Origin: Phallusia mammillata
Taxonomy: Eukaryota
DNA: 64,000 bases
Direction: 5' to 3'
Assembly (NCBI GenBank): GCA_965637545.1
Contig: OZ281500.1
Location: 2,418,001 to 2,482,000, forward strand
Part shown: positions 3,386-55,903 of the stretch, one piece after another
Position numbering within the stretch: the first letter of the stretch is position 1
How the letters are laid out: every line of letters starts with the position of its first letter
Notes under the pieces: generated by a model
What the model was told of the DNA's origin: nothing
What the model saw: the letters and a program-made list of their open reading frames with translations, nothing else
The model's database searches: none
Program-made: the position numbers and the translations under genes

Positions 3386-3958
3386 TTATGGTGGTTTATT
3401 TTGCTTTCTGTTATGTAACGCTTTTTTGAGCATCTTGTGTGCCGCACATTTTGCAAAAACGTAGCTGCGCATCGGAAAATTGTGAAATAAAGTCGAATTG
3501 GTCAAACGCTTTTGCAGAAAAGATCCTGCGTGGTAAAATATGGAAGGGGTGCCATCGTAGGATGGAGTAGGTGGCCTGATTTTTAACTCCCATTCAAATA
3601 TCGCCAACATTTCGGCGACAGCTTTACTCACCAGCTCTGCAACTGGATTTGCAGCATTAGCCAACTTCATAATATGGATGCACACGTCATCAAGATCTTT
3701 CCTAATGTCATCTACATTATCGGGCTGCCTTAATACAGCTGATGTCATTAAAGCAACACTTTGAATGAGACTGATCTTATATGGACTTTTCTCTTTGTAC
3801 GCAAGTCCCAACTGATGCAAAGTTTTTGCTGATTCTTTTGGATCGATTTCCTCTCCATTGTCATAACATTGTTTTTTCAACTTTTTTGTCAAATCATTGA
3901 TGACTACGTCTGTTATTATATCGTTCAAGCAAGCGCACGAATCTTTGCATGCACACAT
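3386..3958 (-). CDS. Copy A: internally deleted mini NTase-TPR paralog (~190 aa; N-terminal domain fused in frame to C-terminal tail, NTase and TPR array absent)
   Basis: ATG at 3958 (MCACKDS...). The N-terminus up to LVSKAVAE matches the full copies and is followed directly by the tail MLAIFEWELKIRPPT...PSIFYHAGS...RSYVFAK. The frame is open to the stop at 3386. Expression unknown. Confidence 0.7.
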   Translation of the reverse strand: MCACKDSCACLNDIITDVVINDLTKKLKKQCYDNGEEIDPKESAKTLHQLGLAYKEKSPYKISLIQSVALMTSAVLRQPDNVDDIRKDLDDVCIHIMKLANAANPVAELVSKAVAEMLAIFEWELKIRPPTPSYDGTPSIFYHAGSFLQKRLTNSTLFHNFPMRSYVFAKCAAHKMLKKALHNRKQNKPP

Positions 3959-6391
3959 ATTTTGCACTACCTGTTACACAATCCGTCCTGTAATAAAAAC
4001 ACAACCAAACATGAATCATTTTTTGTTGAAGAGTTTGTTTATTCCACAGCACTGTTTGTTTTTGGCGTATTTGTAACATATGTTTGTTCCCCTTTCATAT
4101 TTACAATGTTTAATCCTATACCAAAACGCCTTTGCAAATAACGAGGCAGTTGGATGAAAATGATGAAATACTTGCGTGATATTAATTCTCTTCAAAAATA
4201 TGTATGCAAAAATCAAGCAAAACAACTCCATTACTGCAAATATTTTGTAGTGTCAGGAACGAATGATGTTCTATCTAGATTTTTTAATTAGCCAAGTTAC
4301 TTGAAAATTAATTTTCGAGAAAAGTTTTTACCTAAATAAAGTTAATTTTTGCAAGCAACACAGCAGGTTAAAAGGAATTTGTTTTGAAACCAGATTGTTT
4401 CATTAATGTGTTTTACATACATTTTGTTTGCTATCATACTATTTCCGAAACAATTATATCTTCGCTTTTCGTCTACTCTAGCTGATTGCTAACTATAGAG
4501 TCATACAAACATCTGTAGCAAACTACATCTTTTGTTACGGTTGTTGGGTTAAAAATTTTGCGCTGCTGAGCAACACACGCCTGATCTTCAACACTTGTGA
4601 TTTTGGTTCACAAAATTCGATTTAATTATGTACAGAGGGTGCGGTTCTTTTGATGCCCAACTAACCTTTATTTAAAAAACTTCTGCACTTCCCTTACGTT
4701 TAGAAATTTACTGGCGTGAAAACGAACAAAACAAAATGTCCGACCTTTCCATCGTTGTGTTTGACGCGGTCCCCCGAACACATGATCATGAAGTAACGGT
4801 TGGTTGAACTTGACAACTAGTCTTTTAACAACGTCACGTAACTTGCCCATATGTTGGAAAAGAAAACTTGCTTTCTCGACGGCCTAATTTTAAATCATTT
4901 TATTTCATATCGGATCAACATTGGTCCTGTCATTTTCATTGACATGTTTAACGTGGTTTATAGTCTTGGTTCCTTTTTTTTTTAATTTAAATCTCAGGAT
5001 ACAAAATAATTACGCGAGTTGATCTGATATCAATGCCTTTGTGTTACGTTGCTTCGCTCTGGGCTTCCATAGTATACGCAACTTGGGTTTGTAAACTTTG
5101 TTATGAAAACCTGACACCCTCGCTTTATTCTTTGAAAAAAACATATGTAAAAATTGATTCTCACTTCTGTGCTTATATTGACTTAGCATCGAATTTGTCT
5201 AGCAGCACTAACTATAGAAAAACCTGCATGTACAGTAAAAGAACACATATTCCGAAAATTACAAAGGGCTTGGGTTTGTTGGTGACGTTTTCCGTCGTTT
5301 GGGCTATGCGATTCAATCGTCGGTCCTGAATGCGTACGGTAAGGATTTTTCGATTGTCATGTTACGCGAAACGTTTGGTTTTGCCCGCCATACGCCTCAT
5401 TGGCCCCGCTATTCTCTTCTGATCGCGTCAAATGAACATCGTACCTTTAACCAAGAATGCGCTGTATTATTTCGTCATTATTACATCATCGTTTGACAAA
5501 CCGAAAAACTATGCATCTCAGCGCATTCATGCTTGTTGTCAAATTGGTTTAGAAAATTTTACTTTTTAACTCATAGCCCATACTGTTGCCTTGCCTTGTT
5601 CACACTCTGCAGACTCTGCAGACCACATGTGATCTAGACGGATTTGTCCACATTTAAACATTGATTATTTGGTTTTGCAGGGCACAGTTTGCCATTGTAA
5701 GGTTAAATGCAGCCCAACGCCCACACCCAGTCTATGACGTCACATTTATGCCGCTAATTTAAAATGGCCAAAGAAAGTCGTTTGAAAAACTGTTCCTGCA
5801 GCAAAACCCACATCAACACGAAACTTTTGGTCAGTTCGATTTTTAAACATTTTTCGGTGTTCGTAAGCAATGTAGTTGATTAGATGTAAACATGTTAAAA
5901 GGTTGGTCATATAACATTAAGAGCCGCATATTGTAACGTGAAAGTAAATAGCATTGATTTGCACATGTTTTTGTGTAAAATCTGTCGCTTGTGTTTAAAT
6001 CGTCTGCCCGACCAACGATGCGTGTGAGTTAAAAGTTTTTACCTTTTACAACAACACTCGCTACCCGCAGCACTCTCTAAATATGCGAATGGTATATCAA
6101 ACCTCTATTGGCCATAATGTTTACCGTGTTGTAGTTCTAGAAGGATTTTTATTGATTTTGCAAAGCACTTTATCTTTTAGCTTCGAATGAATAATGCTTC
6201 GCGTATCGCGGTTGGTCATCCATGAATGCTTCAGCAGGTAGAGTTACGTAACTCGGGGTCTCGCGTAAATGTATTTACTGTCTCCGCTATGTATCGTTAC
6301 GTCATACGTCAACTTGACAAACTAACTGTTTAGGAAGCTTAAAAGGCCTTTTTTTGCAAAATGTGCCTTTACAAGATGGAAAATCTATTAA

Positions 6392-14841: not shown

Positions 14842-15525
14842 GTAAGTAAGTCTAATTTTGATTATTATAGGTGTCAGTCGCCAACCGCCTGGTTTATTTA
14901 ACTGTGTCCCAAAATAATTATTTGCCCATTTCCTAGCCACGCAATCGCAACATAAATCACCACTCTGACTTTGTCACTAAAAAACGTGTTACACGATATT
15001 ATTTACAAGCACAATAAAACAGCGATCGTTCCGGAAATGTTTAAATGTGGACTTTAGCACAACAAAAACCCGAAAAGGTATTTACACGAAACATAAATGC
15101 GCAACAAAGGGCAAAACCTAATGTGTCAAGATCTTTGAGTTTTGTGTAATATCACCATATTTAATCATAACTTAGATTCCTTTATTACTATTATTGGGTC
15201 CTCTAAGTTTTAACTATACATTCGCCCTCTGTAAATATCACATACATGTTGTGGGAAAAGTGTGTTATGCCACCCTTTCTACAAACACACAAAGGAACGC
15301 TAAAGTATTAAAAAATCCAAAAACATGCAAAAATACAAATATCACAGCATCAGCAATAGCGAAAAGGATTCACACCAAAGTAATTAAACGGCAAAGCGTC
15401 GAAATTTAGCGTGTAAAAACAACACGCGAATAATATGACGAAATCTACGTATTGCGTGTAACATTATTAGCTTCATAAAAGCGTTACATTGGCGTAGGTA
15501 ATAGCATCATTTACATTGGTTTGAT

Positions 15526-18469
15526 TCACAACTTTCGATTATGTAAGTCTTTGGTGAGCATTTTGTGGGCCGCAGACTTTGCAAAAAAACATAACTACGC
15601 GAGAGAAAGTTTTGAATTTAAATCGAATCCGTCAACCGTTGTGGCAAAAGTGTTCCTGCATGGTAAAATATGGAGGGGGAGCTTTCGTAGGGTGTAGTTA
15701 GTGGCCTGATTTTTAACTCCCATTCACACTTCGCCAACATTTTGACAATTTCAACAAATATTTCTTCCACACAGCAGTTGTCATACACAAACTGACAAAG
15801 TTTTATTTCATGTTTTATGGCAGCAAGGCACTCCTCGTAGCGTTGTAGCCTGCATAAGTTTGCAACCAAAGAGAATGCAGCAAATACGGACCTCTCTGAA
15901 TATTTAGGACTTTCTAAATAAATCGACAACTGAAACGCCATTTTGTCAAACCTAATCGCATCATGGGGTCGGCCGGCCTCAACCAGGTGTTTAGAAATAT
16001 GTAGATAAACTAGTTCGGAATCATCTGTCACAGATTGCTTAGGTATATTTGTTTTACGAAGCAATTCCATCTTTTCTTTCCAAAGTTCGTTTAATAACAT
16101 TTCTGCTTCTGGTAGCCGGCCTAATTCTGCCAGGGAGTAACTTTATACACAAGCAACTGATCAACTCTTCCCGAGGTCTTCCATTTTAATGCTTTGTCAC
16201 AGTAGAAAAGAGCTTCTTCGTACCTTTTCAGTTTGTACAGACTTGCGCATGTATAAAAAAATCCCGTATTTAAAATAAAGTCGGTTTCCTCATTTACATG
16301 CTGTTTTCGTCGTTCGGATATCAATTCTTCATTAACCGTAAGAGCTTTGTCATAACAACCCACTTTAATCAGGCACTCATTAAAGCAATACAACAGAGCA
16401 CAAAGACGAGGACTGTCTAACTTTGTGGCAGGATCCTTTTTTGCTTCCTTGTATGCGAGCTCAAAAGCATTCTGTGCCTTTTTGTAGTCTTTGTGCATCA
16501 TGTGGAGATTTCCAATTTCCACGTTGATCAGCACCCTTGATTGACCCGTAATTTCATTCAAATAAACTTCAGATAACATTTCTGTGTATTCCAATGCTTT
16601 TCCGTACCTTTTTAACATACTTAAACAGAAACAGCTTTGCAACAAGAACATCGATATAAGAACATGGTCTTCAATTAAACTTGGCGAATGAAGTATGGTT
16701 AATGCGTCATCACAGATTTTAAGTGCTACTTCATATTCCTCACGTTGAAGCAAACACATCACACGCATAAGCTGCAATGCCGTTTCGTATTTTACATCTA
16801 AATTCTCGTCAGACGTTGTACACGCATCAAATAGTTCTAAAGATGGCACAAACAAACGCAAACTAAATGCCAGCGCCGCTGCGCGACTTGGCGACTCCTT
16901 GAAATCAATGGTTACGAGACTTCTTTCATATTTAAAGCAAAAAACGACGTAGTGTTGAAGTTCTACCGCGATATTTATTCCACTTATAACTGCCATGTTG
17001 CCTATGCCTTTTGTAATGTATTCTGTATCTGTTGGCTGAGACAAAATCAATGGGTGAAGATGTACAATGTCATCTTGGCCTGAAGTTTTGCTGTACCACC
17101 TTAATCGCATTTCACATGCAACTGCTACCGAAAATTGAAGTTTACCGTGTAACGTCTCATTCATTAAACGACGATCCAGCAGTTCGTCAAGGATATCAAA
17201 ACAGGTTAACATGTTACATTTGTACAAACGACCCAGAGCCAAAACAAAAAGAGAACAACTTCGTGAAACAACACGCTTTATGTCAACTTTTGCAGCTAAA
17301 TTGCCGTGCTTTATTTGGTAGAGATCGAAATCTTCTTTAATATTTTGTTGTGCTCGTTGGTTGAAGATGGGCATCTGATTTAGTTTTTGTTCGACTTTTG
17401 ACTCAAACTCTTCAGAAAGAATGGAATCGCCGAATACAAAACAAGTTTTTGTCAACATATCTGCTAAATGATACCCGTTTTTTAAATCCTCTTCTGTTTC
17501 CAAGTACTTTACCATCTCACTGACTGGTTTGATCAGCTCAGTTTTCCACGGCTTCTTCTGTGTCTTTGTTTGTCTTCCCAATGGATTCTTGCTTGCTTGA
17601 GGAGCAAATCCATCAGGACTAATTCCACATGGAGTATATGCGTCATAAAACCAGTTCTTCTCTTCGTTTAAAGGGTTATTAAGACATGGAATTGCCAGAA
17701 ATTTGAGTAAAGTTTCACCGAGACGAACCAGCATCATTTGGTAAACTGTTGAAAACCATTCGAAATATTTCAAAACGTTTTTGTAATCAGGTTGGTCTTG
17801 AATTCCTTCTTCCAATACAATAATACTCTCAAAATCGGAATATGGAGTAACTTCGTTTTTGGCCAACGAACCCATTCCTAATAAAGCAAACTTACAAGGT
17901 GCTTCTCCCATTATGTAAAGAGTATGTTTTGCGATGAAACCCATTATGTCTTTGTATGTTTCGGTAACATAATCCTGCAGTTTCCTCACTTGTTCCACTC
18001 TCTGTCTCCGTATTGAATTAAGCTCATTTCCTTTTAAGTCGTCAGACATCGGTCTTAGCTCACTAAGCTTATCTTTTGTTTTTTTACGAAATATTTGAAT
18101 ATTTTTTTTGATTTCGGCAACAGCTTTACTCACCAGCTCAGTATCTGGATTTTCAGCATGAGCCAACGTCATAATATGCAAGCACATGTCATCAAGATCT
18201 TTACTAATCTCATCAGCATTGTCGGGCTGCCTTATCACAGCTGATGTCAATAAAGCAACACTTTAAATGAGACTGATCTGATCTGTACTTTTCTCTTTGT
18301 ACGCAAGTCCCAACTGATGCAAAGTTTTTGCTGATTCTTTTGAATCTTTTTCCACACCATTGTCATAACATCGTTTCCTCAACTTAGTTGCTAAATCGCT
18401 GATGACTACGTCTGTTATTATATCGTTCAAGCAATCGGACGAATCTTTGCATTCAGACATTTTTAGCAT
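15526..18469 (-). pseudogene. Copy C: NTase-TPR pseudogene
   Basis: Nonsense CAA>TAA at 18263-18265 (ISLI*SVAL), a frameshift at ~16130-16140, and a further stop at 15618-15620 plus a homopolymer shift in the tail. NTase motif GMGSLAKNEVTPYSDFES is retained. Confidence 0.88.
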
Positions 18470-19305
18470 TACTTGTTTTTGTTTGACTTCACAGGTTTCC
18501 TGCAAAACTTCAAAATATACAACACACTTAAATTTGTTGACGCGTTACCTAATTAAACTAATCGCCTTGTTAAAAAAAACAAGAGGTAGTGTAAATCCTT
18601 TGGCCAGGTTCACCGGTGTGTTACTCATTCAAATTTGGCACTAAAAATCTGTTTCTAGGTGTTAATGCTACCTGACAGTTAAACTGGTGAGCTGCTTATA
18701 CATTGTGCTGGATAAATGTGTTTGCCTAATTGATGCGAAATGACTCATTTCCGTTTAATGTGAAATATTATCACCTTTTAAATTGCACGCTAGATGTTTT
18801 GCCAACAGAACGCAGGATGTCCTGTTCCTTTTGCACACGGCTCATTTTCAAGACAAAAACGTTTAGGCTTGCCGTTGTTAAACAAACTAAAACCATGTAT
18901 TTCTAAATTGGATGATTAATGTATATTTTTTCGTAACTTTTATTTGCATGTGTTTTCTTTTTAAATCCAAGCTTTCTGTATGTACTTGTTAAGTACATTA
19001 TACATTTTGGAAGATTATGTCAACCAATGTAGCTCCGTATGAGCTGAAAATACTCGCGGCTGTCGACTTTCCACCGTTACTGGCAGTTCCTAGCTTCCTA
19101 CAATCCATGGTAGCCAATAGCAAAGACCTCTGTACACGCCCCTTGATACATATTCTTTTTTCTGCCGACTAAAAACATGTTTTAAGGACTTTGCTGTAAG
19201 TCGCAGTTGTTACGAAACATAACTGACTGTTTTCATTGTTTGCCACTACACACGCCGTACCGTTTATTTTGTCTTCTATTCGATGTTAATTCTGGTCCAA
19301 TGCAC

Positions 19306-28135: not shown

Positions 28136-28166
28136 AGGGGTTGTTGGGAGTAATGTTGCCCCTACC

Positions 28167-30171: not shown

Positions 30172-32623
30172 TCATCGTGGAGTTGGCGGTCTTGAAACTT
30201 CAATGCGAATATAACGGCGAAATTTGTCATATGTTTGCCAAGGTATTCCCGTTCTATTCTTTTTGCGTATTACTCCCTTTTTTGTAGTCCAAACATCTTT
30301 CAGAAAACGTTCTATTTCTGATTCACGATGCAAGTTTGTCAAGCATTGAACTTTATGAGAAACAAAAATGATAATGTTAGGTGGTTCCTCATTGACTATT
30401 GTGTTTTTCCATGACTTGTCAAGATAATCTAGAGCATCTTTGTATTTCTTTAGGCCACATAGACTGACACCCTTGTATAAAAATGCCAATTTTAAAATAG
30501 AGTCGTTTTCTTCATGTTCATGCTGTTTTCGATGGTGAGTTACCAATTCTTCATTTACTCGTAAAGCTTTGCGGTATTGTCCCAACAAATTTAGGCAGTT
30601 ATTGTATTCAAGTAATATTTCAACATAGTTATGTCGGCCAAGTTTATCGGGAAGTTTCTCTGTTGTGTCGTTGAATGCCAGCTCAAAATACTCTGACGCT
30701 TTTTCGTAGTCGTTTAACCCCAAAAAGCATCTTCCCATGAATGCATTTTTCAGTTTTACAAATGTTCGGTGCTCCGATAAATTGTCTCCTATATCTGCCA
30801 CTGGCAACTGCTTTATGAGTTCCAATGCTATTTCGTATTTTTTTAAAAGAAACAAGCACTGCATGCAATTTAGAAAAATGCGAAGGTTGATGTCGGTTAA
30901 ACAAGGCCAGCCGAGTCGCATTAGTTCTTCTTCACTGACTTCAAGGCTTTTTTTATATGCTCGACAAAAGGTCAAACATTTTATGTACCAAAACTGCAAT
31001 AGGCATCGGTCTTTCTCATTTTTACACTCACACTGTTCTTTGCATTTATTCATTAGCTCTATGGCAAATCTAAACTGATGCAACATATATGCGAGTCGTA
31101 CTGCTCGTAATGGTGATTTTGCAAAATCGATTGTTCCTTCCGTTATTGCTTTTCCATGACATTCAACAACCCACTTTTGTAGCGATTCTGTGATGTTTAA
31201 TCCATCCACAACTGCCTTGGCCCCTATGAACTTTATTACCTTGTCTATGCCGCTAAGCACGTCTACGTTCAAATTGGTTTTTCGGTGCAACATGTCGTTT
31301 TGTCCTGAAGTTTCGCTGTACTGCCTCAAACGCACTTCACATGCAACCGCCAACGAAAATTGAAGTTCACCATGTAACGTTTTATCCAAAATACCACGAT
31401 CCATGAGTTCATCGAGAATATCAAAACTGTTGAAATTCTTACATTCGCGCACACGACCAAGAGTTAAAATGAAAAGCGAACAACTCCTTAACATTACGCG
31501 CTTTATATCCATTTTATCAAAAAAATCTTTTCCTATGTCGTATTGTTCATAATCTTTTTCAATATTCTGCTGTATCCGTTGATTGAAGTGGATGCAACCT
31601 TTGGTTTTGTGTTGATCCAGTGTTTCCTTAATTTTTAGATCAAACTCTTCAAAAACATCGGACTCGCCGAATACAAAACAAGTTGTGGTCAACATATCTG
31701 CTAAATGATATCCGTTTTTTAAATCCTCTTCTGTTTCCAAGTACTTTACCATCTCACTGACTGGTTTGATCAGCTCAGCTGTCCACGGCTTCTTCTGTGT
31801 CTTTGTTTGTCTTCCCAATGGATTCTTACTTGCTTGAGGAGCAAATCCATCAGGACAAATTCCACATGGAGTGTATGCGTCATAAAACCAATCTTCCTTC
31901 TTATTCAAGGGATTGTTAAGACATGGAATTGCCAAGAATCTTAACAAGGTTTCACCAAGACGAACCAGTATCGTCTGGTATACAGTTGCAAACCACTGGA
32001 AATATTCCAAAATGTTTTTGGAATTAGGTTGTTTCTGAACTTCTTCTTCCAACACAATGATGCTCTCGAAGTCAGAGTATGGAGTGACTTCTTTTTTAGC
32101 CAACGAACCCATTCCTAACAAAGCAAATCGACAGGGTGCTTTTTCCATTATGTCAACTGTATATCTTGCCATGATTTTCATTATTTGCTTGTATGTTTCA
32201 GTAACATATTCTTGTATGTCCCTTACCTGTATAACTCTCTGCCTCCGATGTGCATAAAGGTTAGTACCGTTCAATTTGTCGGACATTGACTTTAACTTAC
32301 TAAGCCTACATTTTGTGTTTCCACGAAGTTTTTGAATTTTGTATGCACACGTCATCAAGATCTTTTCTAATGACATCTGCATTGTCAGGGTGCCTTAACA
32401 CAGCTGATGTTATTAAACCAACACTTTGTATGAGACTGATCTTATCTGGACTTTTCTCTTTGTACGCAAGTCCCAACTGATGCAAAGTTTTTGCTGATTC
32501 TTTTGGGTCTTTTTCCACACCATTGTCATAGCATTGTTTTTTCAATGTATTTGCCAAACATTTGATAACTACGTCTGTTATTATATCGTTTAAGCAATCG
32601 GACGCAACTTTGTATGCAGACAT
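30172..32623 (-). pseudogene. Copy E: NTase-TPR gene with a ~74-nt frameshifting deletion and lost C-terminal tail (ORFs 32306-32623 and 30172-32382, 736 aa)
   Basis: DLDDVCI is joined to KIQKLR, removing HIMTLA...EIKEQ. The NTase motif is intact in the long ORF, and homology ends near HDEIRFA. Confidence 0.85.
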
Positions 32624-38494: not shown

Positions 38495-39432
38495 TGATTG
38501 CATCGTGGGGTCAGCCGTCCCAAATCAGTTGTACGGAAATATCTAGATACTAATTAGGTTCGGAAAAATCTGTTACAGATTGCGCGGTGATTTTTTTCTT
38601 TACGAAGTAGTTTCAATTTTTCATACCAACGTTTCTTTAGTGCAGCTGTAGTAGGAAATCAGGTTTATCCGCAAGGAAACGGTCAACGGTTTCCGATCTT
38701 TTGTATTTTAATGCTTCATTTCAGTAAACATGAGCTTCTTCGTATTTTATGTAGTCCGTACAAACTTAAACGTTTATGACGAAAGGCATTTAAAATGTGT
38801 CAGTTTCTTCACCTAAATGCTGTTTTCGTCGTTCGGATATCAATTCGTCAATCACCGAAGGAGCTTTGTTATAACATTCCACACGATTCAAGCAGTTATT
38901 AAAGTAATTTAAATTTAAAAAATAAAAGTGATCGCCCAACTTTGCGATGAAGTCATTTTTGGTTTTGTTATATGTGAGCACGAAATAATGTCTTGCGTTT
39001 TCGTAGTATTCATGAAGCAATGCCCAATGCCTGCGTTAAAGTGCACCCTTAACTCACCCGTGACTTCATTCGAATGAACGTCAGGTAACATTTCTTTATG
39101 TTTAAATACTTGTCTGTACTTTTTTAACACACTCGAACAGATGGAGCAAACTAGCAATATTGCAAACCTCATGCAGGTTCAACTTGGTGGAAAAAGTCGT
39201 GTTATTTCGTCGTTAAAGATTTTAAAGACTCATTCCTATTTCCAAGTTTGAAACAAACATGTGAATCATAGTACCAGCAAACTTCGTTGTTTTTCCCTAT
39301 TCGTTTTTCCGAGGTTTTACATTCAGATAATAGTTTTAAAGCGTGAATGAATGAAAAAAATATGCCAACTATACTGCACGATCTGGCGACTCACATCTAT
39401 GGTACCTTACTTCTTTTGTTTTCAAAACAATG
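38495..39432 (-). pseudogene. Remnant D': duplicate of TPR remnant D
   Basis: ORF 38915-39172 is nearly identical to 27471-27875 over their shared length, with the same breakpoints. Confidence 0.85.
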
Positions 39433-39463
39433 AGGGGTTGTTGGGAGTAATGTTGCCCCTACC

Positions 39464-45472: not shown

Positions 45473-48337
45473 TTATGAATCTAAACTGATTGACGGAGGG
45501 CGTTTTTTCCTAAAAACAGACGCTGCGTGATAAAATATAGAGGGAGTGCAAATGAAGGGTAGTGTTGGTGGTCTGATTCCTAACTTCCATTTACAGCGTG
45601 CACACTTTTGTACGAGATCGACAAATTTTTCCTTTACACAACAGTTTATGTCCCAAGATTGATAAAATGCAATCCCATGCTTCGCTGCAGAAAGGCACTC
45701 TCCATAACGCTGTAGTTTGAATAAGACTCTGACAAGAAACCCTGCAGCATTTACGTAATGCTCTGTCGGTTTTAGGCTACCCGAGTGAAATGACCAATGA
45801 AACGACTTTTTGGCAAAGAAAAGTGCTTCATAAAATTGGCCTTCTTCATAGCGACGAATAGAAATCTTATGACAAATAAAACTGCAGAATTCGAAATATT
45901 CCGTTTCAGATAACAGCATTTCGTTCTCGGAACAAAGTAATTCCCTCTTTTCTTGCCATACAATTTTCAAAAAACTTTTTGCTTCTGATAAACAGCCCAA
46001 CTTTATCAAGCATTCGAATTTATGCGAAACAAAATCGACTATTTGATTAGTTCCATGGTTTTTATTAATATGTTTACATTTCCAGGGTTTGTCGAGGTAA
46101 ACAAGGGCTTCTTTGTATCTTTTCAAGCCGCACAAAGTACCACCTCTGTTAAGAAACGCTAAATTTAAAATACGATCGGCTTCCTCAGGCAAATGCAATT
46201 TTCGCCTTTCGAATATTAATTCATCGTTTATCTGAAGAGCATCGCCGTAACGACCCAAATTATTAAGGCATATGCTGTATTCGTTCAACAATTGCCCGTA
46301 CGTTAAACGGGAAAACTCTTTTGTCTGTTTATTTTGCATTTCGTTGTATGCATGCTTGAAATAATATAAAGCCTGTTTACATTCTTTAAGGGCTAGATAG
46401 CAACGTCCCATGCATACTGTGATATCAAATCTTCTTACAGAATGCAATCCCCTGGAACAGACCTCAGATAACTGTCTCAGATAATTCAGTGCTTCTCGGT
46501 ACTTTTTGAATTTAAATAAGCAAGCCTGATATAGACAAAGGTAATAACTTTGGGTAATGACTGAACCAGTTGAATCAAGACGTATTAATTCATCTTTAGT
46601 GACTTTAAGACAATTTTCGAATTCTTCACAACGATACAAGCATGTCACATATGATGTCATTATCAACTGGCGATCAGACTCATTATCGAACTCGTCCAAA
46701 CCTCCACATTCATTTATTAGTTTTAAAGCAAATTTGTTCAGATTTAATAAAATTGCGATCCCCACTGCTTCAGTGCGCGATTCTTCAAGATCAAGTTTTT
46801 CTATTCTTTCTGTTTGATAGCATTCAATAACATAGTTTTGAAGTGATTCTGTCATGTTTAATCCATCTACAACCGCTCTGTTTCCAATGTCTTCCGTGAA
46901 CTTTTCCATAAACGATGGTTCACCAAAATGGTTGATTTGACGTAAAACGTCATTTTGGCCTGAAGTCTTACTGTACCACCTCAAACGCATTTCACATGCA
47001 ACTGCTAATGAAAACTGAAGTTTATCATGTAATGTCTCATCCAAAATACCACGATCCCTAAGTTCGTCAAGGATATCAAAACAGTTTGAATTGTCACAGT
47101 CATGCAAACGACCTAGAGCCAATACGAAAAGAGAACAACTTCGTAACGCAACACGCTTTATATCTACATTTTTTGTTAAACTTACGGTTTGGACTCGATA
47201 TTGTTCATAATCTTTTCTGATATTCTGTATTACTCGTTGGTTGAAGATGGGCATTTCATTTATCTTTTGCTCGATTTGGGATTCAAAATGTTTGTATACA
47301 GCACAATCGCCATACACAAAACAAGTTGTTGTTAACATATCTGCTAAATGATAACCGTTTTTTAAATCCTCTTCTGTTGCTAAGTACTTCGCCATCTCAC
47401 TGACTGGTTTGATTAGCTCAGTTGTCCACGGCTTCTTCTGTGTCTTTGTTTGTCTTCCCAATGGATTCTTGCTAGCTTGGGGAGCAAATCCATCAGGACA
47501 AATTCCACATGGGGTGTATGCATCATAAAACCAATCTTCGTTTTTATTCAAGGGATTATTAAGACATGGAATAGCCAAGAATTTGAGTAAAGTTTCACCC
47601 AAACGAACAAGAATCATTTGGTAAACAGTTGCAAACCATTGAAAATACTGCAATCTGCGTCTGTAACCAGGCTGTTTTTGAGCACCTTTTTCTAACACAA
47701 TGATACTCTCAAAATCAGAATATGGAGTAACTTCTTTTTTGGCCAACGAACCCATTCCTACCAAAGCAAACTTACAAGGTGGCTCCCCCATTATGAGAAC
47801 AGTTTGTCCGGCAATAAAACACGTTACTTCCTTGTATGTTTCAGTAACATATTCTTGTATTTCCCTTACTTGCTTAACTCTTTGCCTTCGTAATGCACTA
47901 AGCTCTTCGCCTTTCAAATCATCAGGCATTGGTTTTAGCTCACTCAGCTTGTGTTTTGTGTTTTCACGAAGTATTTGAATCTGTTCCTTGATTTCGGCAA
48001 CAGCTTTACTCACCAGCTCTGCATCTGGGTTTGCAGCATTAGCCAACGTCATAATGTGCATGCACACGTCATCAAGATCTTTCTTAATGTCATCTGTTTT
48101 GTCGGGTTGCCTTAACACAGCTGATGTCATTAAAGCAACACTTTGAATGAGACTGATCTTATCTGGACTTTTCTCTTTGTACGCAAGTCCCAACTGATGC
48201 AAAGTTTTTGCTGATTCTTTTGGATCTTTTTCCTCTCCATTGTCATAACATTGGTTTCTCAACTTAGTTGCTGTATCACTGATGACTACGTCTGTTATTA
48301 TATCGTTCAAGCAATCGTACGAATCTTTGCATAGCAT
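45473..48337 (-). CDS. Copy G: intact, intronless DUF294/GlnD-like (protein-PII uridylyltransferase N-terminal-like) nucleotidyltransferase + TPR-repeat protein, ~954 aa
   Basis: Uninterrupted ORF; first ATG at 48337 (the track's 48394 start is GTG). It carries GS-x10-DFE (47708-47752), GICPDGFAPQASKNP, a DUF294_C-like DIKRVALR...ILDELRDRGILDETLHDKL...EMRL segment, and ~8 TPR-like repeats (e.g. MGRCYLALKECKQALYYFKHA, GGTLCGLKRYKEALVYLDK). Confidence 0.9.
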   Translation of the reverse strand: MLCKDSYDCLNDIITDVVISDTATKLRNQCYDNGEEKDPKESAKTLHQLGLAYKEKSPDKISLIQSVALMTSAVLRQPDKTDDIKKDLDDVCMHIMTLANAANPDAELVSKAVAEIKEQIQILRENTKHKLSELKPMPDDLKGEELSALRRQRVKQVREIQEYVTETYKEVTCFIAGQTVLIMGEPPCKFALVGMGSLAKKEVTPYSDFESIIVLEKGAQKQPGYRRRLQYFQWFATVYQMILVRLGETLLKFLAIPCLNNPLNKNEDWFYDAYTPCGICPDGFAPQASKNPLGRQTKTQKKPWTTELIKPVSEMAKYLATEEDLKNGYHLADMLTTTCFVYGDCAVYKHFESQIEQKINEMPIFNQRVIQNIRKDYEQYRVQTVSLTKNVDIKRVALRSCSLFVLALGRLHDCDNSNCFDILDELRDRGILDETLHDKLQFSLAVACEMRLRWYSKTSGQNDVLRQINHFGEPSFMEKFTEDIGNRAVVDGLNMTESLQNYVIECYQTERIEKLDLEESRTEAVGIAILLNLNKFALKLINECGGLDEFDNESDRQLIMTSYVTCLYRCEEFENCLKVTKDELIRLDSTGSVITQSYYLCLYQACLFKFKKYREALNYLRQLSEVCSRGLHSVRRFDITVCMGRCYLALKECKQALYYFKHAYNEMQNKQTKEFSRLTYGQLLNEYSICLNNLGRYGDALQINDELIFERRKLHLPEEADRILNLAFLNRGGTLCGLKRYKEALVYLDKPWKCKHINKNHGTNQIVDFVSHKFECLIKLGCLSEAKSFLKIVWQEKRELLCSENEMLLSETEYFEFCSFICHKISIRRYEEGQFYEALFFAKKSFHWSFHSGSLKPTEHYVNAAGFLVRVLFKLQRYGECLSAAKHGIAFYQSWDINCCVKEKFVDLVQKCARCKWKLGIRPPTLPFICTPSIFYHAASVFRKKRPPSISLDS

Positions 48338-48433
48338 TACTTGTTTGTGTTTGACATTACAGCTTTCGTACAAAACTTCAAAACTACAACACACTTAAAT
48401 TTGTGGACACGTTACCAAATTTAACTAACCACC

Positions 48434-48548
48434 CTGTTAAAAAAAACAAGAACGAGTGTAAATCCTTTGGCCAGGTTTACCATTTTTATTTGTTCATTCT
48501 AATTTGGCACTGACAAAAGCAAAATCTATTTCTGGGTGTTAATGCTAC
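48434..48548 (-). other. Candidate 115-nt 5'-UTR intron of copy G
   Basis: CAG|GTAGCA...TTTTTTTAACAG|G. The same boundaries and length occur upstream of copy H (55993-56107), and the donor is also present upstream of copy C. Confidence 0.5.
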
Positions 48549-48677
48549 CTGACAGTTTGACTGGTGATCTCCTTAAACATTGTGCTGGATAAGTATGATT
48601 GTCCAATAAAGCTTCTTGGTTAATGATTTACGTTAAGTAAACCTAAAACGTCACTCCTGACAACAGTGCATAAACGC

Positions 48678-49756
48678 CCCTCGTGATTTTAATCGCGCCA
48701 TTGTTCTTTACAGTTGATATTGTTTAGTATCAAAATTTTACCTGTAGCCATGCTTTGTATACTGTAGCAAAACATGGTGAAATAGAACTTATATGTAAAG
48801 GAACGTGAAAGAATGGTTCATCACTAAAGAAAACCGCATCACTTACCGGTTTGACTTCGAGTCAAGTTCTATAAAATTTAAAATAGTCTGAATAGACATA
48901 ATCCGGTCACTTTTAATGCCTAAGTGTCCCAGCATATCCTATCTGTTTTGCAACAGGGCGTACTGGTTACCGGACACACACGAGCGTAAAACGCTGGCTG
49001 TCTGGGGATTGTATGCGGCGCGTACTTTCTTGACACTAGCAGACTTGCTCAAAACCACACGCGGCACGTATATTGATCTAGTTGACGCAATTCGTGCCTA
49101 AGGTCGGTTTAATACTTTCTCCATTCACTCAAATTCGTGTCAAGTCCCTTTTTTTGTTCATTTTGACGCGATTGCAGGTATGCCCACTTGATATTGTTTT
49201 ACATTGCTTTTTTGAAGGCTTGATCAGATATCAGTATATCAGACTTTGAAACATCCGTTTCGTAAAAAAATATATATTTTGTGAATTATTGATGAATATA
49301 GAGAATTCAATCTTTGTTTCAAAATGAGTTTGGCAAAGTTAGGGGGCACTGCTTAAGCTTTGGGTTTATGTTGTTGCGTAAGTAATTTGAATTGTTATAA
49401 TTATTGGGCTCGTGCCGTATGCAACTGAACCTGTTTTTTTGCTCAATGAGTACATCTAGTGGCTGTTTACTTTAAAGTTATCACCAATGTAAAACACGAG
49501 TATGGTGGATATATTAGTTTTTTACCTTTACTTTTCTGCACTTGGACCAGTAGCTCCAGGGGTCATATTAAGGCAAATGGGAATAACAGTCAATGGACTT
49601 ATCCCTGACATTACCTTTTCACGATTGTAATCCTTCCCATTGATCTATGACCGTTAGACGTTTTTTTTAGGTGTTATGACTGTTAGTAAAAACTGTTATT
49701 GTTTCTAGGTATATTAGCGGATAATCATTTATACTTTTCTGGTATAACGCTGACAT
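48678..49756. repeat. Segmental duplicate of 1-1089
   Basis: See the feature at 1-1089. Confidence 0.95.
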
Positions 49757-51473: not shown

Positions 51474-51773
51474 TTACAAGTTTCGGTTATGTAAGGCTTT
51501 GGTAACCATTTTGTGTGGCGCACAAAACAGAACTACGCGAAGAGGAAGTTGTGAATTGAACTTGAATCGGTAAAACGCTTGTGCAAAATTGATCCTGCAT
51601 GGTAAAATATGGATGGGGTGCAATCGTAGGGTGGAGTTGGTGGCCTGACTTTTAACTCCCATTTACAACTCGCCAACAGCTTGGCAATTTCAACAAAGTT
51701 TTCTTCCACACAGCAGCATTTGTCACACACAAACTGAAAAAGTTTTATTTCATGTTTTGCGCCAGCAAGGCAC
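51474..51773 (-). pseudogene. Remnant I: isolated C-terminal tail of an NTase-TPR gene
   Basis: CLAGAKHEIKLFQFVCDKCCCVEENFVEIAKLLASCKWELKVRPPTPPYDCTPSIFYHAGS, then frameshifted ...HKMVTKALHNRNL. Confidence 0.88.
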
Positions 51774-53033: not shown

Positions 53034-55903
53034 TTAGGCGTTACGAATTAAAAACCTCTTATCAGCATAAAAAAATACTGAAGGAGAGCAATCGTAGGGT
53101 AATGTTGGATTTATTCCCAACACCCGTTCGCAAAATGCAAATCGTACAGTCATCGCAAAAAATCTTTTATCCTCGAAGCAGTTCTTGCATACAAATTGAC
53201 CAAGTTTTATTCCATGTTTTGCTGAAGCAAGACACTCCTCATAGCGACTCATCTTAAAAAGGTTTAATACGAGGTTCCATGCTGCAGTTACGGACATTTC
53301 GGCGTGTAAGCTTCCCGAGTAAAATGACAAATGAAACGACGTTTTTGCAAATCTTATTGCATCGTGGAGTTGTTCTTTATTAAAATGTTTAGCAGAAATA
53401 TTAAATGAATAAAACTACAGAATAAGGAATATTCTGTACCAGACAGCTCCGTTTTATTCTCTTTGCGAAGTAATTCCATCTTTTCATGCCAAACATTTTG
53501 AAGAAAATTTTCTGCTTCTAATGATCGCCATAAGTTTGTCAAGCATTCGTATTTAGTGGAAGCAAAAACGACAATGTTGCCCTTGTCTTGATTCTCATTG
53601 ATATATTTGCATTTCCATGATTTATCGAGGTAATCAAGAGCTTCGTCGTATCTTTTTAAGCCACATAGACTGTCACCTTTTAAAAGAAGTGCAGAATTTA
53701 TCCACGGATCAGTTTCTTCATCAGCATGGAGTTTCCGTATTTCCAATATAAATTCTTCATTCACAGAAAGAGCATCGTCATAACAACCCAAACTATTAAG
53801 GCATATATTGTAGTAATTCAACAGATCAAAATAAATGCCTCGGTGAAAGTTCTTGTCTTCGAGTTCCTTTTTCACTTCGTCATATGCAATTTTGAAACAT
53901 TTTCGCGCCTTTTCGTAGTTTTCCATCATCGTATAGCATTTTCCTTCGTCTACGTGAATCTCTACTTTTGTTACAGCCCGCATTCCAATTGAATGCACCA
54001 CACGTAACTTTTGTGAGTATTTCAGTGCTTCTTCGTACCTTTGTAAATAAAATAGGCAATGGTGGCAATTGTTCAAGTATTTACCACGCAAATCTAAATA
54101 ATTTTGATTTATTGAACAATGCAAATCTAGTCGTGATAGTTCGTCCTCAGCGACTTTGATGCTCTCCTCGTATCTGTAACAGTGGCGCAAACATGACATA
54201 CACACAAACTGCAGAATTGTTTTGCCTTCCACAGTTTTAAACTCGTTCAAGTATTTTATTTCATCATATAGCACTAATCCGAATTCAAAGAGATACAATG
54301 AACATGCTAGTTGTGCTGCGTTACTTTGCAATTCTGTGAATTCAATTCGTTCTTTTCTTTTTTCTTTAAAACATTCCACAACATATTCTCGAAGCGATGC
54401 TGCAACGTTTAACCCATCTACAACTGCTCTGCTTCCTACGTCTTTTGTAAAGTCTTCCATAGTCGATGGCTCACCGATTTGCGGTTTTTGAAGCAAAATG
54501 TCACTTTGACCGCATGTTTTGCTGTACTGCCTCAAACGCATTTCACATGCAACTGCCAACGAAAATTGTAGTTTATCATGCAACATCTCATCGATGAGAC
54601 CAAGACGCATCAGTTCGTCAAGGATATCAAAACAGTTAAAAGTTTTACAGTCGTACAAACGACTAAGAGCTAAAATGAAAAGAGAACAACCCCTCAACGC
54701 AACTCGCTTGATGTCTATTTTAAAACGAAAATCATTGGGTCGTATTTCAAATAGCTCATAATCTTGTTCGATATTTTGCTGTACCCGTTGGTTAAAGTAG
54801 GATTTCCTGTCTAGTTTCTGTTGATCTAGTGTTTTTCTGATTTTTGTTTCAAATTTTTTGAAAACAACAGAATCACCGTAAACGAAACAAGTTGTGGTCA
54901 ACATATCTGCTAAATGATAACCGTTTTTTAAATCCTTTTCTTTTTTCAAGAACTTTACCATCTTACTGACTGGTTTGATAAGCTCAGTTATCCACGGCTT
55001 CTTCTGTGTCTTTGTTTGTCTTCCCAATGGATTCTTGCTAGCTTGAGGAGCAAATCCATCAGGACGGATTCCACATGGAGTAAATGCGTCATAAAACCAA
55101 TCTTCTTCCTTGTTTGAAGGATTGTTAAGACATGGAATAGCCAAGAATTTGAGTAAAGTTTCACCAAGACAGACCAATATCGTTTGGTAAATAGTTGCAA
55201 ACCATCGGAAGTAATCTAGCAGAATATTGTAATTCTCAATGTTTTGAGCAACTTCTTGTAACACAATAATGCTTTCAAAGTCAGAATATGGAGTAACTTC
55301 TTTTTTGGCCAACGAACCCATTCCTACCAACGCAAACTTACATGGTGGTTCCCCCATGATTTCAATAGTTTGGGTGGCGATAAAGTTCATAATGTTTACA
55401 TATCTGTCAGTAACATAATATTGTATTTTCTTGACTTGTGCGACTCTTTGAATCCGTATTGAATGATGTTTGTCGCCTTTCAAGTCGTCAGACATTGGTT
55501 TCAGCTCATCAAGTTTATCTTTTGTGTTTTCACGAAGTATTTGAATTTGTGCTTTTGTTTCGACAACAGCTTTACTCACCAGCTCTGCATCTGGGTTAGC
55601 AGCGTTTGCCAACGTCATAATATGCATGCACAAGTCATCAAGATCTTTCCTAATGTCATCTGCATTGTCTGGCTGCCTTAACACAGCTGATGTCATTAAG
55701 GCAACACTTTGAATGAGACTGATCTTATCTGGACTTTTCTCTTTGTACGCGAGTCCCACCTGATGCAAAGTTTTTGCTGATTCCCTTGGTTCAATTTCCA
55801 CACCATTGTCATAACATTGTTTTCTCAACTTAGTTGCTAAATCACTGATGACTACGTCTGTTATTATATCGTTCAAGCAATCGTACGAATCTTTGCATAG
55901 CAT
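53034..55903 (-). pseudogene. Copy H: NTase-TPR gene with one late frameshift (ORFs 53354-55903 and 53034-53330; ~956 aa if restored)
   Basis: ATG at 55903 and intact NTase motif. The alternative frame from ~53395 reads AKHFNKEQLHDAIRFAKTSFHLSFYSGSL, matching copy G. The segment is 1 nt short relative to G. Confidence 0.85.

What the first reader, a model, noticed from the sequence alone, without database searches (positions are those of the whole stretch)
3386..55903. Tandem array of intronless GlnD/DUF294-type nucleotidyltransferase-TPR genes in an animal genome: candidate sensor-enzyme immune family
Seen: ten co-oriented gene-derived segments, six of which retain the catalytic motif G-[M]-G-S-x10-D-F-E; a near-invariant NTase core; a highly divergent TPR region; and one intact, several broken and several remnant copies. 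Known: hG[GS]x9-13Dh[DE] defines pol-beta NTases. The GSxxxxExxxxSD spacing, the RPDG/ASxNP segment and the following helical domain resemble the GlnD/GlnE/DUF294 branch, which transfers NMP to proteins, rather than cGAS/OAS. TPR arrays are ligand-binding sensors, and birth-and-death clusters are typical of innate immune receptors. Inference: a variable TPR sensor gating a constant NMPylating (or nucleotide-messenger) enzyme, which would be an animal signalling or defence system with no characterisation that I know of.
Basis: partly seen in the sequence, partly recalled or inferred. Interest (0 to 1): 0.88.

Follow-up and report, generated by a model that had tools for sequence, protein, structure and literature searches.

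The report
Tunicate GlnE/DrrA-type nucleotidyltransferase-TPR gene array
This stretch of a sea-squirt-like genome holds ten tandem copies, one intact and the rest broken or fragmentary, of a gene joining a bacterial-style protein-nucleotidylating enzyme to a fast-diverging TPR binding domain; the family is very large in invertebrate chordates and octocorals, and I found no paper that has studied it.

Summary
Ten co-oriented minus-strand segments derive from one gene. Six keep the G-M-G-S-x10-D-F-E catalytic motif, and only one (45473-48394) is intact. Pfam places the enzyme half in DUF294 above the curated cut-off. A confident AlphaFold model of that half matches GlnE (Z 24.1 and 22.0) and the Legionella AMPylase DrrA (Z 23.6); the next unrelated fold scores Z 8.5, and no cGAS/OAS match appears. 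The enzyme core is under purifying selection (dN/dS 0.10-0.24). The TPR half is only 31-53% identical between copies, and its groove-lining A helices vary more than its B helices (p = 7e-7).

The family is very large: 843 clusters at 50% identity with E <= 1e-30. It occurs in tunicates, amphioxus and octocorals. DUF294-TPR relatives occur in intracellular bacteria (Holosporaceae, Parachlamydiaceae, Neochlamydia NEX2).

The most likely mechanism is a cytosolic protein NMP-transferase (AMPylase or UMPylase) whose variable TPR groove selects the target or activating ligand. An immune or conflict role is circumstantial. I found no paper on the animal family, and recent reviews list only FICD and SelO as eukaryotic AMPylases. 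First readers of this scan noted the same family in the adjacent window and at two other loci of this genome; those notes are unchecked.

The parts
45473..48394 (-). Copy G, the only intact gene. The ORF is 973 aa and the likely start is the ATG at 48337 (about 954 aa). Layout: N-terminal helical hairpins (aa about 22-126), GlnE/DrrA-type NTase with helical DUF294_C-like domain (aa about 127-505), TPR solenoid (aa about 505-960).
   Evidence: ORF; Pfam DUF294 31.8 bits against cut-off 21; AF2 pLDDT 87.9, pTM 0.83; N-half model pLDDT 89.7; fold matches
53064..55942 (-). Copy I: aa 7-957 present, catalytic motif kept, one frameshift near 53410.
   Evidence: Pfam DUF294 27.7 bits
8126..11073 (-). 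Copy B: full length with its own ATG and catalytic motif kept. One frameshift near 9583-9592, in or beside a run of five A.
15618..18514 (-). Copy C: near full length, catalytic motif kept. In-frame stop near 18253 and frame change near 16133-16178.
30172..32605 (-). Copy E: aa 25-845, catalytic motif kept. About 24 aa are deleted with a frame change at about 32339, and the C-terminal TPRs are missing.
   Evidence: Pfam DUF294 38.3 bits and SidM_N 19.1 bits
40234..42484 (-). Copy G': aa 204-961, catalytic motif kept. The 5' 203 codons are lost and there is a frame change near 40587-40607.
3386..3967 (-). Remnant A: N-terminal aa 22-135 (85% identical to G) joined to C-terminal aa 927-964. The whole enzyme and most of the TPR region are deleted.
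27406..27965 (-). Remnant D: TPR fragment (aa about 584-774), inside a recent segmental duplication.
38700..39316 (-). Remnant F: TPR fragment (aa about 565-774), the 94-98% identical twin of D.
51575..51772 (-). Remnant H: C-terminal fragment (aa about 900-964).
48395..48744 (-). Upstream region conserved between G, I and C. It holds a polypyrimidine-AG acceptor-like site (48432-48445) about 97 nt before the ATG. It is probably the promoter and 5' UTR, with a splice or trans-splice acceptor.
   Evidence: alignment; self-blastn; pattern search

Best explanation
The window holds part of a tandem, birth-and-death array of a gene family that expanded within one tunicate lineage.

What each functional copy encodes. 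The protein is about 950 aa and shows no membrane-targeting domain in Pfam, so it is presumably cytosolic. It has short N-terminal helical hairpins, then a GlnE/DrrA/DUF294-type pol-beta nucleotidyltransferase with its helical nucleotide- and substrate-binding domain, then a C-terminal TPR solenoid of about 10 repeats.

Most likely mechanism. The constant enzyme transfers an NMP (AMP or UMP) from an NTP onto a hydroxyl side chain, most likely tyrosine, of a protein. The rapidly diverging concave groove of the TPR solenoid decides which protein is bound. That protein could be the substrate, as with the TPRs of FICD or OGT, or it could be an activating ligand.

Evolution of the copies. The copies share a homogenised 5' end and a conserved enzyme core but diversify their TPRs. 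New copies arise by unequal crossing-over and many decay.

What is shown: the array and the state of each copy, the fold and family of the enzyme, conservation of the catalytic residues across the family, the selection pattern, and the taxonomic spread.

What is inferred: the substrate class, the role of the TPR, and a role in host-microbe or other conflict.
For: Array anatomy.

Family: Pfam DUF294 lies above the gathering score in three copies.

Fold: the AF2 N-half model (pLDDT 89.7, pTM 0.91) matches the GlnE N-terminal domain 1v4a (Z 24.1, 302 residues, 3.2 A), DrrA 6yx5_B (Z 23.6, 299 of 339 residues) and the GlnE adenylylation domain 3k7d (Z 22.0). The next unrelated fold scores Z 8.5. 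Foldseek E-values are 4e-7 to 2e-5. Bacterial DUF294+DUF294_C models align over about 300 residues at 3.2 A.

Catalytic residues: G215, S226, D227, F228 and E229 are invariant in 66 family members (S216 nearly so). This fits the G-x11-[DE]-x-[DE] motif of DrrA and GS-ATase quoted in PMC8097203. Further invariant residues are E267, D291, D301, E326, K413, R418, R470 and Y474.

Selection: dN/dS is 0.10-0.24 in the core against 0.31-0.70 in the TPR part. The A helices vary more than the neighbouring B helices in every adjacent pair: mean amino-acid diversity 0.66 against 0.49, Mann-Whitney p = 7e-7. For the least saturated pair, C-G', dN/dS is 1.07 in A helices against 0.50 in B helices.

Homogenised 5' end: pS is 0.14-0.19 over aa 1-120 against 0.45-0.66 in the TPRs.

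Lineage-specific expansion: the window copies are monophyletic (100/100) inside a tunicate clade. The family has 843 clusters at E <= 1e-30.

The closest solved relatives, GlnE and DrrA, are tyrosine NMP-transferases acting on proteins (established knowledge).
Against: There is no biochemical, expression or interaction data of any kind.

No overall dN/dS above 1 was found. The one value near 1 comes from two pseudogenes, and synonymous sites in the TPR part are near saturation. The A/B helix contrast could partly reflect stronger packing constraints on B helices.

No immune adaptor domains (Death, TIR, CARD, NACHT) were seen in any listed relative.

I could not inspect model coordinates, so I do not know whether the TPR groove faces the active site.

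Kanamycin nucleotidyltransferase, a small-molecule modifier, shares the two-domain core (Z about 8), so a non-protein substrate is not excluded.

Nine of the ten segments in this window are broken or fragmentary.
Confidence: 0.55

Rival explanations
1. Sensor-gated messenger synthase. Ligand binding to the TPR releases the NTase to make a diffusible nucleotide signal (cyclic or linear oligonucleotide, or an NTP-derived alarmone), as in cGAS/CD-NTase or OAS systems.
For: The protein has a pol-beta NTase fold with an intact catalytic triad. Bacterial DUF294 enzymes are habitually fused to small-molecule sensor domains such as CBS, Cache and PAS. A variable TPR fits a sensor role.
Against: The closest solved folds by a wide margin are the protein NMP-transferases GlnE and DrrA (Z 22-24). 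No cGAS, OAS or CD-NTase chain appears among the Foldseek or VIA matches listed. No Mab-21 or OAS Pfam hit was found. No candidate receptor or effector gene is visible in the array.
Confidence: 0.12
2. Housekeeping or regulatory AMPylase family. As with FICD and BiP, the TPR recruits endogenous client proteins, and the copy number reflects neutral tandem duplication rather than conflict.
For: TPR plus AMPylase is the FICD layout, where the TPR docks the substrate. The enzyme core is under strong purifying selection. No immune adaptor domains were seen.
Against: Expansion is massive and lineage-specific, with species-specific clades. Pseudogenes are frequent. TPR divergence is extreme (31-53% identity) and concentrated in the groove-lining helices. 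Among named hits I saw only tunicates, amphioxus and octocorals, with no vertebrate; the lists were not exhaustive.
Confidence: 0.15
3. Selfish or horizontally mobile cargo. The intronless DUF294-TPR gene was exchanged between intracellular bacteria and marine animals and multiplies as part of a mobile or segmentally duplicating unit, with little benefit to the host.
For: The CDS is intronless. Distribution is patchy, and bacterial rows (Holosporaceae, Parachlamydiaceae) are intermixed with octocoral and amphioxus rows in the tree. Neochlamydia has 50 NEX2 paralogues with DUF294 and TPR. Segmental duplications of 94-98% identity lie inside the array.
Against: No transposase, integrase or reverse-transcriptase domain was found in the ORFs of 90 aa or more between copies. 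Purifying selection on the enzyme core and conservation across tunicates at 30-45% identity point to host-level function. All tunicate sequences form one clade with a long stem (100/100), which fits one old acquisition or inheritance rather than ongoing transfer.
Confidence: 0.08
4. Small-molecule nucleotidyltransferase. Like kanamycin nucleotidyltransferase, the enzyme inactivates or activates a metabolite or toxin, and the TPR serves as a scaffold.
For: Kanamycin/aminoglycoside NTases share the NTase-plus-helical-domain core and appear as weaker matches (Z about 8; E about 0.15).
Against: The similarity is far weaker than to GlnE and DrrA. A 450-aa diversifying TPR solenoid is a protein- or peptide-binding device; its best structural matches are LGN/Pins and kinesin light chain TPRs.
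Confidence: 0.05

Closest known systems
DrrA/SidM AMPylation domain (Legionella pneumophila effector; PDB 6yx5, 3nku)
   Same: Same NTase-plus-helical-domain fold (Z 23.6, 299 of 339 residues aligned; Foldseek E 3.9e-7). Same G-x11-D-x-[DE] catalytic motif. Pfam SidM_N is hit weakly by copy E and above the cut-off by amphioxus relatives.
   Different: An animal-encoded gene, not a secreted bacterial effector. No GEF or PI4P-binding domains. It carries a C-terminal TPR solenoid and N-terminal hairpins. Sequence identity is about 14%. Substrate is unknown.
GlnE (glutamine synthetase adenylyltransferase) and GlnD (PII uridylyltransferase)
   Same: Same catalytic fold (1v4a Z 24.1; 3k7d Z 22.0). 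Faint motif-level hits to the GlnE Pfam model and GlnD NCBIfam models. Public databases auto-name relatives 'Protein-PII uridylyltransferase N-terminal domain-containing'.
   Different: Not an orthologue. NCBIfam scores are 12-18 bits against cut-offs of 631-1010. It has one NTase domain, not two as in GlnE, and no HD or ACT domains as in GlnD. It belongs to a multigene family and is not a single-copy nitrogen regulator.
Bacterial DUF294/DUF294_C 'signal-transduction' nucleotidyltransferases (CBS-, cNMP-, Cache- or PAS-linked)
   Same: Pfam DUF294 membership above the gathering score. About 300 residues superpose at 3.2 A on DUF294+DUF294_C models. A constant NTase coupled to a separate recognition module.
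   Different: The recognition module is a C-terminal TPR solenoid instead of N-terminal small-molecule sensor domains. The host is eukaryotic. The function of the bacterial family is itself untested.
Neochlamydia NEX2 family and Holosporaceae/Parachlamydiaceae DUF294-TPR proteins
   Same: Same DUF294-then-TPR order and a large paralogous family. NEX2 has 50 members (Domman et al. 2014, PMC4209131). A Holosporaceae protein of 1295 aa has DUF294 and TPR_12 and is 26% identical over the enzyme half. Bacterial rows group with octocoral and amphioxus rows in the tree.
   Different: NEX2 members carry an N-terminal F-box (some also OTU) and are read as effectors acting on the host ubiquitin system. 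No F-box or OTU is present here. The tunicate clade is separated from these sequences by a long stem.
FICD/HYPE (metazoan TPR-Fic AMPylase)
   Same: Works alike on paper: a TPR domain that docks the protein target, joined to an AMP-transferase.
   Different: An unrelated catalytic fold (Fic against pol-beta NTase). FICD is single-copy, ER-resident and membrane-anchored, with two TPRs. Here the family is multigene, with about ten TPRs and no transmembrane segment.

Membership tests
Pol-beta nucleotidyltransferase superfamily | hG[GS]-x9-13-Dh[DE] motif on the strand-turn-helix-strand core | tested here: met
   G-M-G-S-x10-D-F-E is present in six copies. G215, S226, D227, F228 and E229 are invariant in 66 relatives.
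Pol-beta nucleotidyltransferase superfamily | Third metal-binding carboxylate on a following strand | tested here: inconclusive
   Invariant E267, D291, D301 and E326 are candidates. Which one is structurally equivalent to DrrA D150 or D249 could not be checked without model coordinates.
DUF294 (PF03445) | Pfam score above the gathering threshold | tested here: met
   31.8, 27.7 and 38.3 bits against a cut-off of 21 for copies G, I and E.
DUF294_C / KNTase_C-clan helical domain (PF10335) | Helical substrate-binding domain directly after the NTase | tested here: inconclusive
   By sequence it falls below the cut-off (20.3 against 22.5 bits). By structure, the helical domain superposes with DUF294+DUF294_C models and with GlnE and DrrA.
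GlnD (PII uridylyltransferase) | Equivalog-level similarity plus HD and ACT domains | tested here: not met
   NCBIfam scores are 12-18 bits against cut-offs of 631-1010. No HD or ACT domain in Pfam.
GlnE (GS adenylyltransferase) | Two tandem GlnE NTase domains; PF03710 above the cut-off | tested here: not met
   PF03710 scores 13.6-16 bits against a cut-off of 24, and there is a single NTase domain. The fold is nevertheless shared (Z 22-24).
DrrA/SidM | SidM_N (PF20879) above the cut-off, plus Rab GEF and P4M domains | tested here: not met
   Copy E scores 19.1 bits against a cut-off of 27, and copy G gives no hit. Amphioxus relatives reach 40.7 and 29 bits. No GEF or P4M domain is present. 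The fold is shared (Z 23.6).
cGAS/OAS/CD-NTase messenger synthases | Mab-21/OAS-type NTase fold and Pfam signatures | tested here: not met
   None appears among the Pfam hits or among the listed Foldseek or VIA matches of the enzyme half.
TPR solenoid | Tandem 34-residue helix-turn-helix repeats | tested here: met
   TPR_1, TPR_2 and TPR_12 hits, above the cut-off in copy I. The model shows about 19 paired helices. Best fold matches are LGN/Pins and kinesin light chain TPRs.
Neochlamydia NEX2 family | N-terminal F-box (some with OTU) before DUF294 and TPR | tested here: not met
   No F-box or OTU domain in copies G, I or E. The DUF294-TPR core order is shared.
NLR/STAND-type animal immune receptors | NACHT or NB-ARC NTPase, with Death-fold or TIR adaptor domains | tested here: not met
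   None in the window proteins, in the four relatives I scanned, or in the precomputed Pfam lists of the 240 relatives listed.
Known anti-phage defence proteins (PADLOC) | Match to any PADLOC-DB model | tested here: not met
   No hit at E <= 0.1.
Birth-and-death multigene family | Tandem co-oriented paralogues with intact, broken and remnant copies, and species-specific clades | tested here: met
   The window copies are monophyletic at 100/100.
Birth-and-death multigene family | Diversifying selection on the recognition surface | tested here: inconclusive
   A helices are more variable than B helices (0.66 against 0.49, p = 7e-7). Pooled dN/dS is 0.55 against 0.41, and for pair C-G' it is 1.07 against 0.50. 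No site-model test was run, synonymous sites are saturated, and most copies are pseudogenes.

The most novel reading that the evidence does not exclude
Invertebrate chordates and octocorals may run an innate recognition system of a kind not yet described. It would use hundreds of paralogous 'receptor-enzymes' whose hypervariable TPR grooves bind microbial or non-self proteins directly. Their constant DrrA/GlnE-type domain would then AMPylate or UMPylate the bound protein, or a signalling partner. That would make it a third class of animal AMPylase. It would share ancestry, through gene transfer in one direction or the other, with effector families of intracellular bacteria (Neochlamydia NEX2, Holosporaceae, Parachlamydiaceae).
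Probability: 0.25. Interest if true: 0.85.

Novelty: new variant of a known kind. Interest (0 to 1): 0.62.

Why it matters
Two recent reviews name only FICD and SelO as eukaryotic AMPylases and treat the GS-ATase/DrrA type as bacterial (PMC8097203, PMC12409994). This family would put a DrrA/GlnE-type protein nucleotidyltransferase into animals. It is not a curiosity there but one of the larger lineage-expanded families of tunicates and amphioxus, with 843 clusters at 50% identity at E <= 1e-30.

The pattern of a constant enzyme joined to a diversifying TPR groove, in tandem arrays with rapid gene turnover, is what one expects of recognition genes in sessile marine animals. It offers a direct test: express an intact copy, look for NMPylated proteins, and pull down the TPR partners.

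The close relationship with DUF294-TPR families of obligate intracellular bacteria also bears on how host and symbiont exchange or mimic signalling enzymes.

None of this function is demonstrated yet. What is solid is the gene family, its fold and its mode of evolution.

Tried and rejected
Sequence searches against PDB found nothing significant. I tried the whole protein, the family profile (DrrA only at E 0.56-1) and an amphioxus relative. The link to DrrA and GlnE therefore rests on Pfam and on structure.

The whole-protein fold searches were swamped by TPR proteins. I therefore modelled and searched the enzyme half alone.

PADLOC gave no hit. NCBIfam gave only motif-level GlnD hits far below the cut-offs.

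Rfam, tRNA and tandem-repeat scans of the window found no RNA gene and nothing tied to the array.

Nine inter-copy ORFs of 90-147 aa had no Pfam domain, so I found no transposon machinery and no partner gene.

Here I found a conserved 1.1-kb unit on the 3' side of six of the ten segments. In the two units whose ORFs I listed there was no conserved plus-strand ORF: reading frames decay after about 10 shared residues. The lead is not confirmed in this window.

Assembly artefact is rejected, because the copies differ by dS 0.3-1.6.

I did not run codon site models. There are only six sequences, five of them are pseudogenes, and the TPR synonymous sites are saturated.

The scan of bacterial and archaeal genomes returned a single locus, because the search patterns were tuned to the tunicate consensus. 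It is not a census.

Full report
**What is in the window**

The DNA is AT-rich (GC 32-40% in 2-kb windows), with no assembly gaps.

Nine ORFs of at least 150 aa lie on the minus strand between 3386 and 55939. The longest is 973 aa (45473-48394). Searching it against the window with tblastn gives ten co-oriented segments:
- A 3506-3949
- B 8192-11040
- C 15621-18514
- D 27406-27965
- E 30193-32605
- F 38700-39316
- G' 40234-42484
- G 45476-48394
- H 51575-51772
- I 53064-55942

The motif G-x-G-S-x(8-12)-S-D-F-E occurs six times, all on the minus strand, in B, C, E, G', G and I.

Only G is intact. The other copies are damaged as follows:
- B has one frameshift near 9583-9592, in or beside a run of five A.
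- I has one frameshift near 53410.
- C has an in-frame stop near 18253 and a frame change near 16133-16178.
- E has lost about 24 codons, changes frame at about 32339 and stops at aa 845.
- G' has lost its first 203 codons.
- A joins the N-terminus (aa 22-135) to the extreme C-terminus.
- D, F and H are TPR or C-terminal fragments.

The copies are real paralogues and not assembly duplicates: pairwise synonymous divergence is 0.3-1.6.

**Gene structure**

The coding sequence is uninterrupted. The first ATG of the G reading frame is at 48337, and homologues start at the equivalent place.

About 350 bp upstream is conserved between G, I and C. This region contains a polypyrimidine tract ending in AG about 97 nt before the ATG. 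That would suit a 5'-UTR intron or the spliced-leader trans-splicing common in tunicates (my own knowledge).

A Ciona homologue (P0105) is also one uninterrupted 2493-nt CDS, nested in an intron of an ABC-transporter gene. 'Intronless CDS' is therefore a family trait.

**What the protein is**

Pfam places copies G, I and E in DUF294 (PF03445) at 31.8, 27.7 and 38.3 bits against a cut-off of 21. Weaker hits go to DUF294_C, GlnE and SidM_N, and there are TPR hits in the C-terminal half.

AlphaFold2 with a 66-sequence alignment gives a confident full-length model (pLDDT 87.9, pTM 0.83). The enzyme half alone gives pLDDT 89.7 and pTM 0.91.

The enzyme half was compared with solved structures:
- VIA-align: GlnE N-terminal domain 1v4a Z 24.1 (302 residues, 3.2 A); DrrA 6yx5_B Z 23.6 (299 of 339 residues); GlnE adenylylation domain 3k7d Z 22.0.
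- The next unrelated fold scores Z 8.5, and kanamycin nucleotidyltransferase about Z 8.
- Foldseek agrees, with E 3.9e-7 to 1.8e-5 for the same three entries and 0.15 for the next.
- No cGAS, OAS or CD-NTase entry appears in either list.

In the ESM Atlas, about 300 residues superpose at 3.2 A on bacterial DUF294+DUF294_C proteins.

The first 100 residues or so form TPR/14-3-3-like hairpins. This match is weak (Z 7-8.5).

The C-terminal half is a TPR solenoid most like the LGN/Pins and kinesin light chain TPRs.

Across 66 relatives the invariant columns include:
- G215, S226, D227, F228 and E229, which fit the G-x11-[DE]-x-[DE] motif quoted for DrrA and GS-ATase in PMC8097203;
- E267, D291, D301 and E326;
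- K413, R418, R470 and Y474 in the helical domain.

The active site therefore looks maintained throughout the family.

The protein is not an orthologue of GlnD, GlnE or DrrA:
- NCBIfam GlnD models score 12-18 bits against cut-offs of 631-1010.
- There is one NTase domain, with no HD, ACT, GEF or P4M domain.
- PADLOC has no match.

**How the copies evolve**

By Nei-Gojobori estimates:

| Region | Amino-acid identity | dN/dS |
|---|---|---|
| NTase core (aa 196-365) | 77-90% | 0.10-0.24 |
| TPR part (aa 501-973) | 31-53% | 0.31-0.70 |

Synonymous difference is uneven along the gene: pS is 0.14-0.19 over aa 1-120, 0.29-0.35 over aa 281-360, and 0.45-0.66 in the TPRs. Together with the conserved upstream DNA, this suggests gene conversion or recent exchange at the 5' end, while the TPRs keep older divergence.

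Within the solenoid I classed the helices by the canonical TPR pattern; the B helices carry the Y-x-x-A-L-x-x-[YF] signature. Every A helix is more variable than its neighbouring B helices. Mean pairwise amino-acid diversity is 0.66 against 0.49 (Mann-Whitney p = 7e-7). A helices line the concave groove where TPR proteins bind peptides (established knowledge).

Pooled dN/dS is 0.55 in A helices against 0.41 in B helices. In the least saturated pair (C-G') it is 1.07 against 0.50. This is suggestive of diversification of the binding groove, but it is not proof, because C and G' are pseudogenes and no site model was run.

Self-comparison shows several repeated blocks:
- a recent 2-kb segmental duplication carrying D and F (94-98% identity);
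- a 97% repeat between window 1-1089 and 48678-49756;
- a 1.1-kb unit on the 3' side of A, C, D, F, G' and H, but not of B, E, G or I.

**How wide the family is**

Copy G finds at least 715 proteins. The named ones among the 120 listed are from the ascidians Ciona intestinalis and Clavelina lepadiformis, at 28-45% identity.

A profile of the enzyme half, searched against 1.84 billion cluster representatives, finds 2470 clusters at E <= 1e-3, 1791 at E <= 1e-10 and 843 at E <= 1e-30.

Named relatives also include:
- dozens of amphioxus proteins (Branchiostoma floridae, B. belcheri, B. lanceolatum);
- octocorals (Dendronephthya, Paramuricea, Xenia);
- Parachlamydiaceae genomes assembled from metagenomes.

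A scan of bacterial genomes returned a 1295-aa DUF294+TPR protein of Holosporaceae bacterium 'Namur', with a paralogue on the same contig.

Domman et al. 2014 (PMC4209131) described NEX2, a 50-member Neochlamydia family with an F-box, DUF294 and C-terminal TPRs.

In a maximum-likelihood tree of 67 enzyme halves:
- The five window copies form one clade (100/100).
- That clade lies inside a 27-row clade holding all named tunicate rows and eight unnamed rows, with 100/100 support and a stem length of 1.24. The window is therefore very probably tunicate DNA, and the array expanded after its lineage split from Clavelina and Ciona.
- Amphioxus, octocoral and bacterial rows are intermixed in the other half. 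For example, one octocoral clade is sister to a clade holding both Parachlamydiaceae rows (93/75).
- The tree is unrooted, so the direction of any transfer is open.

I saw no vertebrate among the named hits, but the lists are not exhaustive.

**How it most likely works**

The closest characterised relatives all transfer an NMP to a tyrosine of a protein: GlnE on glutamine synthetase, GlnD on PII, and DrrA on Rab1 (established knowledge). I therefore read the enzyme as a protein NMP-transferase.

A TPR solenoid of about ten repeats with a diversifying groove is a protein- or peptide-binding device. In FICD and OGT the TPRs dock the substrate (and my own knowledge). In bacterial DUF294 proteins a separate sensor domain accompanies the enzyme.

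The TPR therefore either selects the protein to be modified or senses a ligand that switches the enzyme on. I cannot separate these two options without coordinates or experiments.

A conflict or immune role rests on three things: lineage-specific expansion, rapid turnover, and kinship with families of intracellular bacteria that are read as effectors. It is an inference. No Death, TIR, CARD or NACHT domain was seen in the relatives listed.

**Novelty**

Full-text searches found no paper on an animal DUF294-TPR family. The HEPN survey lists GlnD/GlnE/DUF294_C as bacterial. Two AMPylation reviews name only FICD and SelO as eukaryotic AMPylases.

On the other hand, the proteins are in public databases under automatic names. 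Examples are 'Protein-PII uridylyltransferase N-terminal domain-containing protein', or misleading names such as KLC1, TTC28 and OGT. The fold family is also well known.

I class it as a new variant of a known kind: a GlnE/DrrA/DUF294 enzyme in a new host group, with a new partner domain arrangement and a new evolutionary mode.

First readers of this scan noted the same family in the window just before this one and at two other loci of this genome. Those notes are unchecked, and I could not read that DNA.

Noticed in passing
window 26539-28505 and 37855-39801: A recent segmental duplication of about 2 kb, 94% identical overall and 97-98% locally. It carries the TPR remnants D and F and is much younger than the divergence between the gene copies.
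   Followed up: partly
window 1-1089 and 48678-49756: A 1.09-kb direct repeat at 97% identity, 48.7 kb apart. One copy lies just upstream of intact copy G and the other at the window start. It may be part of a larger duplication unit or a young dispersed repeat.
   Followed up: no
window 2525-3459, 14400-15620, 26611-27186, 38007-38478, 39801-40206, 50580-51557: A conserved unit of about 1.1 kb (67-86% identity) on the 3' side of segments A, C, D, F, G' and H but not of B, E, G or I, so the array has two types of 3' flank. In the two units whose ORFs I listed (14400-15650 and 50500-51600) I saw no conserved plus-strand ORF.
   Followed up: partly
window 61170-61646: A tandem repeat of a 160-bp unit, 3 copies, 87% matches, outside the gene array.
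   Followed up: no
window about 48340-48360 (minus strand), and the same place upstream of copy I: A short out-of-frame upstream ATG opening a 6-codon reading frame that ends just before the likely main ATG. It is conserved between G and I and could be a small uORF.
   Followed up: no
L005 2563-6450 (Holosporaceae bacterium 'Namur', JACGYV010000021.1): A bacterial 1295-aa protein with DUF294, a weak SidM_N hit and C-terminal TPR_12/TPR_10. A 1428-aa paralogue (P0250) lies on the same 22-kb contig. This is an intracellular bacterium with the same architecture as the animal family.
   Followed up: partly
L003 10001-12493 (Ciona intestinalis AP043575.1): The Ciona family member P0105 is a single-exon CDS lying inside, and antisense to, a gene for an ABC transporter.
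   Followed up: no
P0121 (Branchiostoma hybrid, XP_078684219.1, 2060 aa): Three enzyme halves with identical profile scores (aa 208-681, 833-1306, 1458-1931) in one predicted protein. This is either a true triple-enzyme protein or three tandem genes merged by the gene model.
   Followed up: no
P0293, P0330, P0347 (two of them unnamed, one Parachlamydiaceae): Relatives in which a methyltransferase domain precedes DUF294. P0259 and P0270 carry ankyrin repeats with DUF294 and TPR. The enzyme is combined with varied partner domains outside tunicates.
   Followed up: no
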